The translations under genes were made by a program, and so were the position numbers. From Vitrella brassicaformis CCMP3155 (Eukaryota > Protista > Chromerida), in NCBI GenBank assembly GCA_001179505.1, contig CDMY01000405.1:248001-312000 (forward strand): a stretch of DNA of 64,000 nucleotides, in the 5' to 3' direction. Shown here in pieces: positions 32,237 through 39,739 of the stretch. Under the pieces are notes generated by a model that ran no database searches, was not told the origin of the DNA, and saw nothing but the letters and a program-made list of their open reading frames with translations. Within the stretch, counting starts at the first letter, position 1. Every line of letters starts with the position of its first letter.

Positions 32237-33321
32237 CTAACCCGACTGACTGCCCTCTGCGCATCCCATCCATGTGCATGCCATCCATGCTGTGTACGCT
32301 GTGGGATGGATGCTGCCACTGGGTTGCGCTTTATTATCTATCATTGTCTGTCATTATTGTGTGTGTATGTGGTCAATGACTCGTGATTTGGGTCGCTGTC
32401 AGTTTCCTGTTGACGCGCCAGTGCTATCTATGTGTAGAGGCTGGACGTGCTTGGGAGTTTTGCCCATGTGTGTCCCTGTGCCCTGGTCTGTCGCCGGCCA
32501 TCGACGCGTACCGGTCCCTCGGTGCAACGAGGGGCGAGTCCACGTCAATCGCCAACGGCCGACCAAGACACGGACAGACAGATGGGCAAGGGGTTCTGCT
32601 TTGCTCCTTGCCGATGAGTGCATTCGTCCGATTCGTTCCCTGTCTGCGTGTCCGCAACGTTTCGGCTGCAAATCTGTGTGCCTCTCCTTTGCATGTCGTC
32701 TGCGGATGGCTCCTCGCCCCTCGCTGCAGCGGGGGGGCGGGTAGACGTTCACGGGCGAGGGATCACCAGAGGACGGGCACACAGAGGGCCGTATGGTCGG
32801 TGAGGGATGGCTATGTGAATGTGTGTGTGTGTATATTGATTTGTATATCTGTCATTTGTGTATAGGGCCACGATCCGATCCTTTCGGTGGCCTGGCCTGT
32901 GTCTGCTAGAATATGTACACTAAGACACACTGGTGTGCTGTACCGATACAGGGAGGGAGGGAGGGAGGGCGGCTGTGGTGTCGACATGACTGCAGGCAGC
33001 ATGTTGGGCGACAACACTGGTACTCATGCCGCGATGTCTGTGCTGCGTGTATGTGCGTGTGTGTGTGCGTGTGTGTGTGTGTATGAGGACGGGGGACTCG
33101 ACAGACACAGCGGGGTTTGGTTTGAGTGAGTCAGCCAGGCACACTTTATGCACAGGGCTGCACGGCACGGCACACGAACGTACCTACAGTCACCGAACCA
33201 ACGAAGCACTGTCCACAGTCAGCTAAGCTTAGTCAGCTAGCTTTCACAGCTATGCGATAGATGTGCCACACACCAGCACCACCAGCATGGACCATCCAGC
33301 ATCCCTCACGTCACTCACGTG

Positions 33322-36300
33322 TTAATAGTAGTGCGGCCCCCCCCTGATGCACTGCATGCAGTCACACAGCCGACCCTCCTCGTCATCATCAAAGTCATCG
33401 TCCGCACCACCACCACCAGCCATGCCACCCGCACCCACACCATTATACGCTGGGGTGTCTGTGGGCTTCACGAAGCCCTTGAGTCCCTGGCCGTACGACC
33501 CACCACGCATTACTGAAAGAGAAGAGAGAGAAAGAGGAGAAAAGAGAATGGGCGGTTGCTGTCTGTCTGTCTGACATGACATCCATTGTACGTACGAGCT
33601 GGTCGTGGTCTGTTGAGTCGAGCTAGCAAATCGCGACGTCTACTCGAGGCTGCACACACACAGCCACAAGCCACCAAACAACCAGCCGTGAGTGGAAAAC
33701 ACGACAGCCGTGAGCTGAAAAATGGATACCAGCCCCAACACGTCACGTCACTGTCTCTCACACAACGAACGCAATGCAGGCAGCCGTGTCACCCCAAAAA
33801 ACCCTCTCGGTCGGATCGAGCCTCTCTCTCCCCGCCACCCACCCCTCCCACACACGGCGAAAAAGAAACCGAACGCGCCAGCCTTATCATGCAAGGCCAC
33901 TCTCTCTCTCGTGTGTCTGTCTCTCTCGCATGAGGTTACGTACCCGAAGCGACCGCGCCCGCGACTGCAGTGACTCTGACGCCGCCGACCCTGCCGCCGT
34001 TCCATACCTTCGCAACGCCCTCGTAGAACCGACGGAACGACGCCGCCACCTGTCCCACAGGTGGACAACGCGAACACACACACACGTGCATAGGCCTCAG
34101 AAAAAGATGAACGAACAAGTATGTGTGTGTGTTTCCGGCATATGGACTGTACGTGTTGTCCGTGCTTGGCGGCTTTCTCGTCGTATTTGGCGTTGAACGC
34201 CGCAGCCCTGACGCGACGCGCACAGAGAGAGGAAGAGAGACAAGAGTGTGCGTGCGCTGGTTTGGCGTGATGAAATAGGTCCCTCCCTACCTCTGGTTGA
34301 CGAACTCTCTGAATCGGCCGGTGACGTCCTCGAAATGGACCGACTCGAACCCACTGGCCTCCAGGTGCTCCCTGCAACGCAATCAATACACACATAAACG
34401 TCACACGTCGCACACGTCACACATATAAGTGGATTGAGTGAATGTCTGTGTCTGTCTATGGTTGGCTTACTTATACTGTGTGAGTGTGGGCAGGTTCTTG
34501 CAGGCGACGTAGTTGGTGAGGATCTCCTCGTCCTCGGCGGTGAACGGCTCCCTCTGGTAATAGTCCTCCTACACACACACACAACACACAGACACACAGA
34601 CATACACACGTGGGTCTTCTGCCCCCCCCTGTGTGTGTGTGTGCTGACTGCGTATAGGATTGCCCCCGGCTTGAGGAGGCTCCGGATGTTCTTGAAGAGC
34701 GCGTGCCGGTCCGCCACGTGCAGGAACACCAAAAACGAATACGCGCCATCGAACAGACCACCGCACTCATCTGCACACACACCCGCCCGCACACACACGT
34801 GGATGGCCGTTCAATGAGATCAGCACGTCCTCTTGCTTGCACACGCATACGAAGGGACCTTTGGTGACGGTGCAGAGGTCGCCACAGATGTGTGTGACCC
34901 TGTCGGTGAGCCGTGCCCTCTTGGTGAGGTCGTCTGCCAGGTTGTGCAGCTCCTGCTGGATCTCCACGCCCACCACACTGCAGTGGGCGGGCTGCAGAGA
35001 ATGCACCCAGTAGCGACACACACCTGCACAACACAACACACACACAACACACATACATTGGCAGCAAGCAGTGTGAGTGTGGATGTGGGTGCCCCCCCTT
35101 CTGGCTGCCATCGGACTGACCTCCGAGGCCCGATCCAGCGTCGAGTATGCGACACGGCCTGCCGCTACCGGTCTGGGACTTCAGGCCCAGCTTCTCACAC
35201 GCAGTGCTGCACACACAGACCCACAGAAAAGGAGGAAACAGAGAGAGAGATAGGAACAGACACTCCACACAACCTCCCTCGCCCCCTGGCCCCTCTCCTT
35301 GCGACCGACGTACTTGACGGCGTCGTTTCCCCAGTAGTGGTAGTGCGTCAGGGTCTCCTCCTCGCTGGGGTCCAGCCCCCCACCCTCCGGCTTGGTGGCG
35401 AGTGCCGCCTCGATGTCGGCCATGATCTGACGCTTCCTGTACCAGTACATGGCGTGCAGGTGGTCCTCGTTGGCCTCCCCCGGCAGACAAGTCACCACAT
35501 CAGCCACTGACGGGGTGGGGGATGCGATCAGATCCAGGCTGGCCAGCGCACTGGGGATAGAGGGAACGAGGAAGAAAGATGCTTGTGGGGTGTATGTGTA
35601 TGGGTGTGTGTGGTGTGGGAGGGTTGGTGGCTCACTTGACGCAGTCTGTGACGGTTGTGTCGGTGACGACTGGCTCACATGACCAGTGCACCCCTGCAAC
35701 CATTGCATTCAGCAGGGCAGAGGCAGAGAGAGAGAGAGACAGACAGACGGTGCGGCACAAACCATTTCTTGGCACGTGTGTGTGGTTAATGTGGCTGTGT
35801 ATGATCTGCGTTGCGTACCAGCGAGCCACGCTGCGGCGTCCTCCTTGGTGTTTTTGTAGTTGTCGCTGAAGTAGTCCACCCAAGAGGACTTCTGCGTCTC
35901 GATCTCCTGGAGGATAGACATCAACACGGACACACGGACACACGGACACACGGACACAGACAAAGGCGCACACATGAGTAGAGTGTGTAGGAGCACGTGA
36001 ATCTCTCGCCGTGTGTGTGTGTGTGTGTGTGAGCGTCACATGCATCTCACGTGGCAGACGAGCCTGGTGACCTCCAGCAGCTTGCGGATGGCGACGCCGT
36101 GAGTGGCGATCACATCCTGTACGGACGCACAGACAACGCACACGACACAAAATCCTTTCCTTTGATGACAGCAGGCGAAAGGTGTCATTCATATACAGTC
36201 CCACCGACCTTACCTTGTGTGCGGCGACGAGAAAGCACGGCCACCTGTTCGTTTGCACAAGGCAGACAGACAGACAGACACACACAGCCACTTTCGGTGA

Positions 36301-37602
36301 TGCGGTCAGTGAAACGCATCGATCGCTCTTCGGTGGTCAGCTCACGGCGTGACGCATTCGCCGACGCGCTTCCACTCCCCGCTGTCACACAGCCACTTGG
36401 TCTACACACACACACACACATACACACACACACACACACACATCCATCCATCCAAAGGTATGCACAGGCATCACATCGACCCNNNNNNNNNNNNNNNNNN
36501 NNNNNNNNNNNNNNNNNNNNNNNNNNNNNNNNNNNNNNNNNNNNNNNNNNNNNNNNNNNNNNNNNNNNNNNNNNNNNNNNNNNNNNNNNNNNNNNNNNNN
36601 NNNNNNNNNNNNNNNNNNNNNNNNNNNNNNNNNNNNNNNNNNNNNNNNNNNNNNNNNNNNNNNNNNNNNNNNNNNNNNNNNNNNNNNNNNNNNNNNNNNN
36701 NNNNNNNNNNNNNNNNNNNNNNNNNNNNNNNNNNNNNNNNNNNNNNNNNNNNNNNNNNNNNNNNNNNNNNNNNNNNNNNNNNCCCCCCCAAGGTGCACTC
36801 ACTCACCGTGTATTTCTCCCACATGAATGCCTGTATCTCCCCCTTGTCCATGGCCTCCCTGGCGCCGTCCAGCGACCCCACCACCTTGAGCTGCAGATCA
36901 TGGGACGGGTCCCAGCCCCTGCTCCTGGCGTCCACATACGCCATCAGGTGGGAGCCGCTGCCCATCCGACTCACGCCGTACACAAGGCCCTTCAGATCTG
37001 ACGCACTCTGCACACACACATAGATAGAGACGATGGATGGATGGACACAGTGGCGGTTGGTCACGGCACTCACCTGTATGTTGGTGTTTTTGGCGGACGT
37101 GTGTATGCCCCAGGTGAGTGGCGACCTGACGTAGGTGCCCACGATGCGATTTGAGCTGCCCTTGGCGACTGCACACACACACAACACCAGGGTAAGACAC
37201 ACACACACATCACATCACACATGATGCATTGTCTGTTGGTGGATCGTCTCAATTTGCACTATGTGTGGACTGACTGCCTGACTCACTGTCCGCGACGATG
37301 CCCTCCGACAGCAAAATGGCCACGTCGATGGTGCGCTCACTCAGCGCCTTGGTCATCGCACCCGTACCACCTGCACACACATCCACGCACACACACAGCA
37401 GAGATGAGCACTCCATCTCTGGAGTCGTCATCTGGCACATGGTCTGACCAGCGAAGTCCTGCCAGTGGAAGTCGATGTGGTTCTGCCGATAGAGGCCCCT
37501 CGAGTGCGCCACGTGGAAGGGCGCGTTGAAGTGCTCTGGCACACCACCCACGCGGATGGTCGCCACGTCACCATTCAACGTGGGGCCACCAGATGCCGCC
37601 AT
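33322..37602 (-). CDS. Fusion protein: NMT1/THI5-like (CA3427-like) periplasmic-binding-fold domain plus class I SAM-dependent methyltransferase
   Basis: N-terminus IRVGGVPEHFNAP, GTGAM, IVGTYVRSPLTWGI, GVSRMGSGSHLM, AFMWEKYT, TPWPCF. C-terminus HYHYWGNDAV, ILDAGSGLGG, VVGVEIQ, HICGD, FDGAYSFLVFLHV, LLKPGA. One exon (35314-35550) bridges both parts in frame. Confidence 0.88.
36483..36782. other. Assembly gap (300 N) inside an intron
   Basis: The flanking exons join in phase 0 (AFMWEKYT/TKWLCDSGEWKRVGECVTP), so no coding exon needs to lie in the gap. Confidence 0.95.
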
Positions 37603-37675
37603 CCCTTCAATAGGCGGCCTCGAAGGCGTCTTCTCCGCTACTCTCAAAGGAAAAGCCGTCTCTTTTTTGACCAAA

Positions 37676-37683
37676 AGCTCGCA
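37676..37683 (-). promoter_or_regulatory. TGCGAGCT element (AGCTCGCA on +)
   Basis: In the 157-bp spacer between 37602(-) and 37760(+). Confidence 0.55.
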
Positions 37684-37759
37684 GCGGCCCGAGCTTGCAA
37701 ACGTCTCTCTCTCTTGTGGACATTCCGTGAAACCGCTCTTTCTCTCTCTTGTGGCGGAA

Positions 37760-38397
37760 ATGAAAAAGGGCTTCCTCGCCCAGAAGAATGGAGCAGGCGC
37801 TCGCAAGACATCGCTCGGACTCCTGTCTGGTCCGCTGCCCGACGCGCCGCCAACACAGCCCGACGGGAAGGTCAGCAGCGCAATTCACAGCGCAGCGCAG
37901 CACAGGACAGCACAGCACAATTACACGGCTTCAGGGATGCACACACATGAGTGCATGCAGGTGGAGGATGCAGTGGAATGAAGCTGATTGATTGTCGGCT
38001 TGTTGTTCTTCAGCTGACGTGTGATCACTTCGTGGTGGAGCGGCTGGTGGGCCAGGGGAACTTCTCGGAGGTCTTTCACGTCACGCAGAAGGGCACAGGC
38101 AAGGAATACGCCATGAAGATCATCAATAAGGTACCAACAGGCGAGACGCAGGCTGACATAGCGGCCTGCGAATGGCTTCTGATTGGTTGTTTGTTTGCGG
38201 GAGGCGCGTGTGGAGCGTCTGCACAAGACGCAGGACGTGTTGATGGAGAAGCACTGCCTTCTGAAGCTCAACGAGCCGGGCCACCCCAATGTGGTGCGGC
38301 TGCATTACACCTTCAAGGACACGCAGAATGTGTACATGGTCACCGACTACTGCTCGTACAAAAGACAAAGGACACACACCGGACAGACAGCAGAATG

Positions 38398-38433
<36 letters not shown>

Positions 38434-39739
38434 GGTGGTGAGCTGTGGGAGGTCATCCGGAACAAGGGATGTTTCTCGAAGGAGGTGGCGCTGCACTACC
38501 TGTCGCAGCTCATATGTGCTGTGGAGTACCTGCATGGCAGGAACATCGTGCACCGAGACCTCAAGGTCAGTCAGTATCCTTTCAATTGCTCTTAGGCTCG
38601 TTGATGAATGGAGCCTGTGCATCATTGTCTCTGTGCAGGCTGAGAATCTGATGCTGTGCAGTGGTGGTGTGTTGAAGGTCATTGACCTCGGCACGGCCAA
38701 AGACCTCGACAGGCCTGACCTGGAGGGCAGCGGCAACAGATGCGGACAGTAAGTGTGCCTGACTGAACTGACACAAATGCAATGCACATAGTTTTCCATA
38801 TCTGTGTGTGTATTGACGGCTCGTAGGAAGGTGTTTCAGCACTATGTAGGCACGCCCAACTTCATGGCGCCAGAGACCATCCACAACAAGGCCTCCACCA
38901 AGGAGAGCGATCTATGGTCTCTCGGATGCACCATCTACCAAATACTCACCGGTAGGCACGGTGCATCCCTTCCTGCTGGCACATATTCATGCAATTGTCG
39001 TTGTGTGTGTGGGTGTTGGTCAGGCTGTCCTGCGTTCACGGGTGCGAGCGAGTACCTCATCTACTGCAAGGTGGGTGCGAGAGACAACAGCAGACACACA
39101 CTCGTCGGTGCGCGCCGCTTGGCATGCGTCCATGCATTGCGTCAGGTGCTGGCAATGGAGTTGGAGTTTCCGCCCTCGTTCGATCCCCAGGCTGAGGACC
39201 TCATACGAAAGCTGCTCGTGCACGACCCGGCGAAACGGCTCGGAGCGCAAGGAGGTAAAGACTTGTCGACACGCATGGATGCAGCCAGGGGTGCAGACGG
39301 GTCCCTGTGTTGTCATCGATCAGGTTTCTCCGAGATAAAGTCGCATCCATACTTCGCCGGCTGCAGCTTCGTCACCCCTCCACCCCGCCCTCCGCCCTTC
39401 CCGTCACTCACCCATCTCTGCCTCAGCCGCATCGCTGACCGATATTTGAGCTCACACACACAGCGCCCCCCGCCTCCAGAGGCGCCACCAGCAGCAGCAG
39501 CATCAGCGCCATCGAGGACGCTGAGCGAGTCGTGGGTCGACACTCACGTCAAGGCGGGGGGGCTGAGCGATGAGAGCGCTGCGTTGTTGCGGCGGACGGT
39601 TTATCTGGGTGAGCGGTATGCACGTGACGCTGCGCCGCGTGACGCGCCTGAGGAGACGGGGAATGAGGGCGTGAACAGCGAACCAGCGTCGGCTGATGGG
39701 ACTGAGGATGAGGATGGAGATGAAGAGAATGGGGATTGA
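37760..39739 (+). CDS. PDK1-like AGC Ser/Thr kinase without a PH domain
   Basis: GQGNFSEV, YAMKIINK, VLMEKHCL, HRDLKAEN, VIDLGTAK, YVGTPNFMAPE, SDLWSLGCTIYQILTG, F.GASEYLIY.K and IKSHPYF. Confidence 0.9.

What the first reader, a model, noticed from the sequence alone, without database searches (positions are those of the whole stretch)
33322..37602. THI5/CA3427-like binding-protein domain fused to a SAM methyltransferase in one ORF
Seen in sequence: hand splicing gives one frame from a complete periplasmic-binding-fold domain (PEHF, GSG, MWE, TPW motifs) into a class I methyltransferase. Exon 35314-35550 runs from the last PBP helix (NALASLDLI) straight into the MTase N-terminus (HYHYWGNDAV), so this is not two merged genes. 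Established: CA3427-like proteins are normally stand-alone with unclear ligand; THI5 itself is an enzyme; MTases of this pattern include sarcosine/dimethylglycine and phosphoethanolamine N-methyltransferases. Inference: a ligand-sensing or substrate-channelling methyltransferase, possibly making an osmolyte (betaine or DMSP type), which would suggest a function for the orphan family.
Basis: partly seen in the sequence, partly recalled or inferred. Interest (0 to 1): 0.75.

Follow-up and report, generated by a model that had tools for sequence, protein, structure and literature searches.

The report
Binding-protein–methyltransferase fusion gene in Vitrella
This is a real, expressed 19-exon gene of the alga Vitrella brassicaformis that joins a Ca3427-type binding-protein domain to a SAM methyltransferase; the same fusion is already in public databases for many protists, some animals and a few bacteria, but nobody has studied it and its substrate is unknown.

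Summary
On the minus strand, 19 GT-AG exons (37602 to 33322) give one open frame. Spliced transcript contigs from three runs cross every junction. They include exon 35550-35314, which runs from the last helix of the binding-protein domain into the methyltransferase.

The assembly gap (36483-36782) lies inside an intron. The transcript length between its flanking exons equals the sum of the modelled exons, so no coding sequence is hidden there.

It also missed an intron-retaining isoform that stops at 33939-33937.

The gene model is public: CEM10810.1, 675 aa, Vitrella brassicaformis. The architecture is not rare. More than 50 protein clusters carry it. They come from at least 9 choanoflagellates, Diphylleia, an amoebozoan, a dinoflagellate, bdelloid rotifers and Phaeodactylibacter-type Bacteroidota. 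I found no paper on it.

The osmolyte idea is not supported:
- The methyltransferase is nearest to phosphoethanolamine N-methyltransferases, but it lacks their Arg-Asp pair and their phosphate-binding residues.
- The Ca3427 cleft, whose residues are invariant in the fusion family, is mainly hydrophobic.
- Related long forms add an AttH/CrtC-like domain, and the solved or named enzymes it matched all act on lipophilic substrates.

My best reading is a small-molecule methyltransferase whose binding domain captures a hydrophobic or amphipathic substrate. The substrate remains unknown.

The parts
37603..37656 (-). 5' UTR. The transcript 5' end lies at about 37655/37656.
   Evidence: The X1 contig ends at 37656. 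The X8 contig ends at 37655 and is followed by sequencing-adapter letters. I saw no ATG upstream of 37602 in this stretch.
37449..37602 (-). Exon 1, with start codon at 37602-37600. It encodes the start of the PBP domain, including the GGVPEHFN motif.
   Evidence: joint 37370/37449. P0082 residue 1 maps here.
36807..37370 (-). Exons 2-4 (37370-37287, 37168-37074, 37007-36807). They encode the PBP domain core (GTGAM, SPLTW, SRMGSGSH, FMWE).
   Evidence: Joints. Pfam PBP2_Ca3427_like 2.2e-11 on exon 4. Match to PDB 2x7p.
36483..36782 (.). Assembly gap (N). It lies wholly inside the intron between exon 4 (ends 36807) and exon 5 (starts 36401), next to a (CA)n run.
   Evidence: Transcript contig arithmetic (299 letters equals the sum of exons 5-9) and family consensus across the junction. 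DNA contigs of run X3 also stop at 36395 and 36783.
35636..36401 (-). Exons 5-9 (36401-36346, 36244-36214, 36116-36051, 35906-35819, 35693-35636). They encode the second half of the PBP domain (TPWPCF, EDAAAW).
   Evidence: for phases. Joints 36241/36343, 36115/36213 and 35692/35818.
35314..35550 (-). Exon 10, the linker exon. It encodes the last PBP helix (NALASLDLI), a low-confidence linker and the N-terminal helices of the methyltransferase (THYHYWGNDAV).
   Evidence: One uninterrupted piece in the X1, X7 and X8 contigs, with joints 35550/35636 and 35206/35314. In the AF2 model, helix 270-282, low pLDDT around residues 300-320, helices 313-371.
33944..35206 (-). Exons 11-17 (35206-35121, 35023-34859, 34770-34649, 34568-34471, 34371-34291, 34207-34153, 34049-33944). 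They encode the class I SAM methyltransferase domain (ILDAGSGLGG, VGVEIQ, GDL, FLVFLH, EDYY).
   Evidence: Pfam Methyltransf_11/23/25 at about 1e-11. Fold matches to PMT, AtmM, SDMT, CmaA1 and TleD at Z 25-27.
33937..33939 (-). Stop codon TAA used when the intron after exon 17 is retained. This isoform is 596 aa and ends ...AVASGT.
   Evidence: The X1 contig is unspliced over 33200-34047. X7 and X8 have contigs over 33621-33973. P0001 ends ...ASGT.
33596..33649 (-).
   Evidence: Joints 33512/33596 and 33649/33944 in X7 and X8. It is present in the public model P0082.
33322..33512 (-). Exon 19. It encodes a low-complexity C-terminal tail (Gly-rich, then acidic, ending ...CIRGGPHYY) and the stop TAA at 33324-33322.
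   Evidence: No Pfam family matches the tail.

Best explanation
One nuclear gene of Vitrella brassicaformis encodes a cytosolic two-module enzyme. Residues 13-300 form a Ca3427-type periplasmic-binding-protein fold (venus flytrap) whose ligand cleft is conserved residue for residue with the fungal Ca3427 crystal structure. Residues about 313-596 form an intact class I SAM-dependent small-molecule methyltransferase of the PMT/RebM/TleD/CMAS structural clade. The protein belongs to a widespread but unstudied family in which this methyltransferase clade was always found fused to, or directly behind, a Ca3427-like domain. Shown: the gene structure, its expression as one mRNA, the two folds, and the distribution of the family. 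Inferred: the binding domain captures the substrate and hands it to the methyltransferase on the same chain. The substrate is most likely hydrophobic or amphipathic (an isoprenoid-, acyl- or lipid-like molecule, perhaps with an anionic head group). The substrate itself is unknown.
For: Gene and transcript. The gene is identical to the public protein CEM10810.1 (P0082, 675 aa), shown.

Folds: Pfam PBP2_Ca3427_like scores 65.3 bits against a cut-off of 27, and Methyltransf_11 scores 43.8 against 21.2. The AF2 model has pLDDT 89.8. Ca3427 (2x7p) matches at Z 36, rmsd 1.9 A over 288 residues. Methyltransferases match at Z 25-27.

Cleft: the Ca3427 ligand-contact residues are E11 H12 F13, P85-W88, R112, W163 E164 T167, P186 W187 and W245, and the cleft is 'mainly hydrophobic'. 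These correspond to invariant or nearly invariant columns of 50 fusion proteins, and Vitrella keeps them.

Methyltransferase intact: motif I (ILDAGSGLGG), E406, D434 and H458 are all kept. Vitrella keeps 99 of the 110 positions that are at least 85% conserved.

Obligate coupling: a profile of 37 methyltransferase domains drops from 1e-79 to 1e-24 once family members are exhausted. The two 'stand-alone' hits I looked up lie 4 and 57 nt behind a Ca3427-like ORF on the same strand.

Lipophilic substrate:
- The PMT Arg127-Asp128 pair is replaced by [W/F]-Leu, and the phosphate binders are not kept.
- Long forms in the same well-supported clade, including the most similar protein P0004, carry a third domain.
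- That third domain folds as an AttH/CrtC-like barrel. Its matches are AttH at 2e-10, kievitone hydratase at 1e-9, decalin Diels-Alderases, 25-phosphosteroid lyase, and carotenoid 1,2-hydratase at TM 0.79.
Against: - No substrate was tested, and I could not read the model's inter-domain geometry or PAE. pTM is only 0.70, so it is not shown that the cleft faces the active site.
- The best sequence-profile matches of the methyltransferase are phosphoethanolamine N-methyltransferases (2e-37, against about 1e-26 for the next families). The nearest Atlas cluster is also named PEAMT. Both point to a polar amine.
- Several invariant arginines (R389, R421, R462, R541) would suit an anionic, water-soluble substrate.
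- The hydrophobic-cleft argument rests on crystallisation additives (PEG, glycerol, acetate), not a natural ligand.
- Vitrella itself lacks the AttH-like domain.
- Vitrella differs at D346 (Thr), which is Asp in all 49 other family members. It also sits on a long branch (1.14 against a median of 0.36). Its activity may therefore differ or be weakened.
- Bacterial gene neighbourhoods gave no pathway clue apart from a LysR regulator.
Confidence: 0.5

Rival explanations
1. Polar-amine or osmolyte methyltransferase. The methyltransferase N- or S-methylates a small water-soluble molecule such as phosphoethanolamine, glycine/sarcosine, taurine or MTHB, and the PBP domain binds that molecule or its product.
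For: The family profile matches plant and Plasmodium PMTs best (2e-37 to 1e-27). The catalytic His132 of PfPMT corresponds to invariant H458. The PBP domain is related to the sulfonate binder SsuA (Z 27; TIGR01728 at 1.4e-9). The nearest Atlas cluster is named PEAMT.
Against: Arg127-Asp128 of PfPMT is replaced by [W/F]-Leu, and Tyr175/Arg179/Tyr181 are not kept. The NCBIfam sarcosine/dimethylglycine model scores 41.7 bits against a cut-off of 550. DSYB matches only at 9e-10. Known DMSP S-methyltransferases are single-domain proteins or DsyGD, and none carries a PBP domain (PMC11306096). The Ca3427 cleft is mainly hydrophobic, and PLP and amino acids did not bind it.
Confidence: 0.2
2. Regulatory sensor. 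The PBP domain does not deliver substrate. It closes on an effector molecule and switches the attached methyltransferase on or off.
For: PBP folds serve as sensor domains in many proteins (general knowledge). Ca3427 shows open and closed forms. The linker has low confidence and pTM is 0.70, which is compatible with mobile domains.
Against: The methyltransferase clade was never found without the PBP domain beside it, and the cleft is invariant across very distant lineages. This fits a shared substrate as well as, or better than, a regulator. Nothing here tells the two readings apart.
Confidence: 0.12
3. Two-step enzyme. The PBP-fold domain is itself catalytic, as THI5 and MqnA/MqnD are, and makes or alters the molecule that the methyltransferase then methylates.
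For: Pfam NMT1/THI5 scores 30.3 bits, above its cut-off of 20.5. The cleft holds a strictly conserved polar cluster (Glu-His in PEHF, Glu in MWE, Thr). The bacterial stand-alone forms start directly at the conserved N-terminal motif with no room for a signal peptide, so they are cytoplasmic and not transport proteins.
Against: No THI5 chain matches at E up to 0.01. The Ca3427 authors judged the geometry of the polar cluster unlike catalytic triads of hydrolases, and PLP did not bind.
Confidence: 0.1
4. Degenerate copy. The Vitrella protein has lost or changed the family's activity.
For: D346 is Asp in 49 of 49 relatives but Thr in Vitrella. Q347H, W534F and G477A also differ. The terminal branch is three times the median length. 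The linker exon finds no relative in 1.84 billion representatives.
Against: 99 of 110 conserved positions are kept, including all SAM-binding motifs and H458. The gene is expressed and correctly spliced in three studies.
Confidence: 0.06
5. Artefact. Two neighbouring genes were joined by read-through transcription or by assembly.
For: Contigs across two genes do not by themselves prove a single transcript (caveat).
Against: The domain boundary lies inside one exon with a continuous frame. More than 50 independent clusters from other organisms have the same order and spacing, including intron-less bacterial genes.
Confidence: 0.02

Closest known systems
Candida albicans CA3427 (PDB 2x7p/2x7q; Pfam PF22384 PBP2_Ca3427_like)
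   Same: Same fold (Z 36, rmsd 1.9 A over 288 residues, 27% identity; phmmer 8e-39). The same cleft residues are present: PEHF, SPLxW, SRxGSGS, MWE, TPW and the Trp of EDAxxW.
   Different: CA3427 is a stand-alone 299-aa protein of unknown ligand. Here the domain is the N-terminal half of a methyltransferase. W190 becomes Phe and T248 becomes Gly in Vitrella.
Phosphoethanolamine N-methyltransferases (PfPMT 3uj6; AtPMT1 5wp4)
   Same: Best profile match of the methyltransferase domain (2e-37 to 1e-29). Same fold including the C-terminal helical lid (Z 25.6-27.2). The catalytic His132 position is kept as H458.
   Different: Arg127-Asp128 is replaced by [W/F]-Leu. The phosphate-binding Tyr175, Arg179 and Tyr181 are not kept. 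PMTs have no PBP domain.
Lipophilic-substrate methyltransferases of the same structural clade (TleD 5gm2, BezA 7fbh, C6-FPP methyltransferase 9tb4, CmaA1 1kpg)
   Same: Fold scores are tied with the PMTs (Z 23.8-25.5). 9tb4 is the best single-sequence PDB hit of the Vitrella domain (2.5e-10). Pfam CMAS scores just above its cut-off (28.2 against 27).
   Different: NCBIfam cyclopropane synthase models score far below their cut-offs (25-31 bits against 400-650). No shared substrate-binding motif was tested.
DsyGD (bifunctional DMSP enzyme) and single-domain DSYB/TpMMT/DSYE
   Same: A class I methyltransferase joined to a second module in one chain for a small-molecule pathway (PMC11306096).
   Different: The partner domain is a decarboxylase, not a PBP fold. 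DSYB matches the family profile only at 9e-10. Nothing links this family to DMSP.

Membership tests
Ca3427-like PBP (Pfam PF22384) | Pfam model above its gathering score | tested here: met
   65.3 bits against a cut-off of 27, residues 123-217 of P0001. Exon 4 alone scores 44.5 bits.
Ca3427-like PBP (Pfam PF22384) | Two-lobed type 2 PBP fold superposable on 2x7p | tested here: met
   VIA-align Z 36.0, rmsd 1.9 A, 288 aligned residues. Foldseek 1.2e-21, TM 0.86 normalised by the target.
Ca3427-like PBP (Pfam PF22384) | Conserved cleft residues named in the structure paper (E11 H12 F13, P85-W88, R112, W163 E164 T167, P186 W187, W245) | tested here: met
   E23 H24 F25, P96 L97 W99, R125, W174 E175 T178, P197 W198 and W256 are present in Vitrella and invariant or nearly invariant in 50 fusion proteins.
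Ca3427-like PBP (Pfam PF22384) | Stand-alone protein of about 300 aa | tested here: not met
   It is fused in frame to a methyltransferase, and the domain boundary lies inside exon 35550-35314.
THI5/NMT1 HMP-P synthase | Clear sequence kinship to THI5 | tested here: not met
   The Pfam NMT1 hit is only 30.3 bits (cut-off 20.5) and covers half of the model. No THI5 chain matches among PDB sequences at E up to 0.01. The Ca3427 paper gives under 20% identity to THI13.
THI5/NMT1 HMP-P synthase | Active-site Lys (PLP Schiff base) and donor His | not tested
Class I SAM-dependent methyltransferase | Rossmann-like fold with GxGxG motif I, an acidic residue after strand 2 and the Asp of motif III | tested here: met
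   ILDAGSGLGG, E406 and D434 are present. Methyltransf_11 scores 43.8 bits against a cut-off of 21.2. The fold matches at Z 25-27.
Phosphoethanolamine N-methyltransferase | Catalytic His (PfPMT His132) | tested here: met
   It aligns with invariant H458.
Phosphoethanolamine N-methyltransferase | Arg127-Asp128 (SRD motif; Asp128 is the mutated residue of entry 4r6w) | tested here: not met
   The family has S-[W/F]-L at this place, and Vitrella has S-F-L (alignment).
Phosphoethanolamine N-methyltransferase | Phosphate-binding Tyr175, Arg179 and Tyr181 (residue roles recalled from the literature, numbering checked against the alignment) | tested here: not met
   They align to a variable residue, a gap and Ser in the family profile.
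Sarcosine/dimethylglycine N-methyltransferase | NCBIfam equivalog NF041675 above its cut-off | tested here: not met
   41.7 bits against a cut-off of 550.
MTHB S-methyltransferase (DSYB and related) | Specific similarity to DSYB | tested here: not met
   The family profile matches 7wdw only at 8.6e-10, rank 26, behind many unrelated methyltransferases.
Cyclopropane fatty acid / mycolic acid synthase (CMAS) | Family models above their cut-offs | tested here: inconclusive
   Pfam CMAS scores 28.2 against 27, which is borderline. NCBIfam CFA synthase models score 24.7-30.9 bits against cut-offs of 400-650. The bicarbonate-site residues were not tested.

The most novel reading that the evidence does not exclude
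The Ca3427 fold is a cytosolic lipid- or isoprenoid-presenting module, and this family is a new kind of methyltransferase that needs it to reach a lipophilic substrate. In the long relatives (for example dinoflagellate MGD), a third AttH/CrtC-like hydratase/cyclase domain makes it a three-module, single-chain pathway comparable to carotenoid hydration followed by O-methylation. By 'Rosetta stone' logic, the orphan fungal Ca3427 protein would then work with a separate PMT-like methyltransferase on the same class of molecule.
Probability: 0.25. Interest if true: 0.7.

Novelty: new variant of a known kind. Interest (0 to 1): 0.42.

Why it matters
Ca3427 was solved in 2011 as a possible antifungal target, and it still has no ligand or function. 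A fusion conserved in protists, rotifers and Bacteroidota ties that orphan fold to a SAM methyltransferase. In some lineages it also ties it to an AttH/CrtC-like domain. This gives the first testable hypothesis for the whole family: pull down the ligand of the PBP domain, then assay methylation. Several organisms that carry the fusion could serve for such tests, for example Salpingoeca rosetta and cultured Phaeodactylibacter. For Vitrella itself the gene is one more of many domain fusions. Its sequence is already public, so the value lies in the family-level link and not in this locus.

Tried and rejected
- Exon-by-exon scans were mostly too short to score. NCBIfam gave nothing. PDB gave nothing for exon 12 and only weak hits for exon 13.
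- An HMMER search of the 78-aa linker exon against 1.84 billion representatives found only the gene's own product plus a low-complexity protein. That stretch is too divergent to trace the fusion. The search was still useful because it returned a stored copy of the protein (P0001).
- A word search with the Vitrella methyltransferase domain alone found nothing useful.
- The Monosiga model carries an NTP_transferase tail that first suggested a phosphobase/CDP pathway. That tail is most like GDP-mannose pyrophosphorylases and FAP182, and no other choanoflagellate has it. It is probably a merged gene model.
- Bacterial neighbourhoods of the fusion share only a downstream LysR regulator. Polyamine and methionine-salvage genes appear nearby in single genomes and are not conserved.
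- Neighbourhoods of 75 stand-alone bacterial Ca3427-like genes show a PNP_UDP_1 gene overlapping the start in Flavobacteriaceae. This is family-level synteny that is not kept in other orders.
- The DMSP and betaine ideas were rejected on scores and residues.
- Literature searches for Ca3427, the accession numbers, THI5/NMT1 plus methyltransferase, and SsuA fusions found no description of this architecture.


Full report
**Observation**

The gene lies on the minus strand. From the sequence I placed 18 exons between 37602 and 33322. A script that used coordinates only showed that every intron is GT-AG and that the exons join in one frame with a single terminal stop.

The joined translation was computed only inside that script, to check frame and stops. 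Searches used exon references, or the database's own copies of the protein (P0001, P0082).

Pfam on single exons already gives PBP2_Ca3427_like for exon 4 (2.2e-11) and Methyltransf_11 for exon 13 (1.3e-5).

**Gap and transcript test**

Eight public runs hold the stretch. Four hold about 0.46 of its sampled words, which is the exonic share, and three hold 0.99. I laid X1, X7 and X8 (the exon-share runs) and X3 (a DNA-like run) on 33200-37750.

- The first three runs give contigs that skip the predicted introns exactly. All skips have CT..AC ends on the + strand, which is GT..AG on the minus strand.
- Exon 35550-35314 carries the end of the binding domain and the start of the methyltransferase. 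It is one uninterrupted piece in all three runs.
- Between 35550 and 36807 the X1 contig holds 299 letters. That is exactly the sum of exons 5 to 9, so nothing coding is hidden in the N gap (36483-36782). The gap is intronic.
- The family consensus also runs straight through that junction.
- The DNA contigs of X3 break at the same place, next to a (CA)n run.
- The 5' end of the mRNA is at about 37655/6, where an adapter follows in X8.

RNA joints 33512/33596 and 33649/33944 add a 54-nt exon, giving 19 exons and 675 aa. The intron after 33944 is retained in the X1 contig and in part of the X7 and X8 RNA. A TAA two codons into that intron then ends a 596-aa isoform.

**Identity**

The HMMER search of the linker exon returned only the gene's own product. 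Its cluster mate is CEM10810.1 / UniProt A0A0G4FDB7, 675 aa, from Vitrella brassicaformis CCMP3155. It matches my 19-exon model. The gene model is therefore already public.

**Folds**

- Pfam on the whole protein gives PBP2_Ca3427_like (7e-18), NMT1 (5e-7) and several class I methyltransferase models at about 1e-11. CMAS is borderline.
- An AlphaFold2 model built on 50 family members has mean pLDDT 89.8 and pTM 0.70. The linker around residues 300-320 is weak.
- The N-terminal domain superposes on Candida CA3427 at Z 36 and rmsd 1.9 A.
- The C-terminal domain matches PMTs, AtmM, SDMT, CmaA1, TleD, RebM and BezA. All lie within about 1.5 Z units of each other, so the fold alone does not name a substrate.

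**Distribution**

A word search with the full protein found about 55 clusters that cover 90-98% of it at 31-40% identity. The named ones are:

- nine choanoflagellates;
- Diphylleia rotans;
- Soliformovum, an amoebozoan;
- a dinoflagellate (MGD);
- bdelloid rotifers;
- Phaeodactylibacter and other Bacteroidota.

Some unnamed members sit on eukaryote-like contigs. Among the bacterial species genomes matched, only 5 loci carry the fusion, while at least 587 carry the stand-alone form of about 285 aa.

A profile of the methyltransferase domains falls from 1e-79 to 1e-24 once family members are exhausted. The two apparent stand-alone methyltransferases that I looked up lie 4 and 57 nt behind a Ca3427-like ORF. 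This methyltransferase clade therefore always travels with the binding domain.

In a quick tree, Vitrella sits on a long branch. It falls inside a well-supported clade with the long three-domain forms and the Bacteroidota.

**What it may do**

The Ca3427 structure paper lists the residues that line the ligand groove. It calls the groove mainly hydrophobic and able to take long acyl chains or carotenoids. PLP and several amino acids did not bind (PMC3073944). Those same positions are invariant or nearly so in the fusion family, and Vitrella keeps them.

The methyltransferase profile matches phosphoethanolamine N-methyltransferases best (2e-37), and the catalytic His is kept. However, the Arg-Asp pair before that His is [W/F]-Leu here, and the phosphate-binding residues are not kept.

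Long relatives carry a conserved third domain. I folded it (pLDDT 81, pTM 0.82). It is an AttH/CrtC-like double barrel whose nearest structures are AttH, kievitone hydratase, decalin Diels-Alderases, 25-phosphosteroid lyase and carotenoid 1,2-hydratase. All the solved or named enzymes among these matches act on lipophilic substrates.

Taken together, I favour a methyltransferase that acts on a hydrophobic or amphipathic molecule captured by the binding domain. This is inference. The polar-amine reading, a sensor role and a catalytic PBP domain all remain open.

Vitrella differs from all 49 relatives at D346 (Thr), so its activity may be altered.

**Comparison and novelty**

I found no paper that mentions this architecture. 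Known DMSP methyltransferases are single-domain proteins or DsyGD.

The finding is real, but the locus is already annotated and the architecture is common in databases. What is new is the family-level link between an orphan fold and a methyltransferase.

I confirmed that through the cluster member's record.

Noticed in passing
window 33200-33655: RNA contig depth is 2-3 times that of the coding part. Loose ends at 33269 and 33420-33424 run into three different foreign sequences in X7 and X8. The place is a GGT-repeat stretch, so this may be assembly-graph tangling or another transcript.
   Followed up: partly
window 33650-33943: The intron after exon 17 is retained in one whole contig (X1) and in part of the RNA of X7 and X8. 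This gives a 596-aa isoform that lacks the low-complexity tail of the public 675-aa model.
   Followed up: yes
window 37951-38750, + strand: Protein-kinase-like ORF pieces (GQGNFSEV, YAMK, HRDLK) lie head to head with this gene. About 300 bp separate them from its transcript start.
   Followed up: no
window 36405-36445 and many introns of the gene: Introns are full of (CA)n/(GT)n runs. The assembly gap abuts one of these runs, and independent DNA contigs (X3) stop at the same place.
   Followed up: partly
P0004:625-908, P0009:665-946, P0034:600-864, P0008:620-915: Long relatives of the fusion carry a conserved third domain with no Pfam family (motifs HDSLQYHF, YSKRYYG, ADAxFGDxKYNYFK, ERCxGT). 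It folds as an AttH/CrtC-like double barrel.
   Followed up: yes
P0003 (916 aa, JGI): A protein made of three tandem Ca3427-like domains, each 43-47% identical to the Vitrella domain. Its source organism is not known.
   Followed up: no
L020-L089 (Flavobacteriaceae loci): The stand-alone Ca3427-like gene is preceded by an overlapping PNP_UDP_1 phosphorylase-family gene within a block 2OG-oxygenase / SUI1 / DUF1835-like / PNP_UDP_1 / PBP. This holds in 45 of 47 Flavobacteriaceae loci and 49 loci in all, but not in Cytophagales, Chitinophagales or Saprospirales.
   Followed up: partly
L001, L002, L003, L006: In Phaeodactylibacter the fusion gene is followed on the same strand by a LysR-type regulator gene, 4-50 nt downstream.
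   Followed up: partly
P0048 (Monosiga brevicollis, 930 aa): The public model adds an NTP_transferase domain that is most like GDP-mannose pyrophosphorylases. No other choanoflagellate has it, so it is probably two genes merged in the model.
   Followed up: partly
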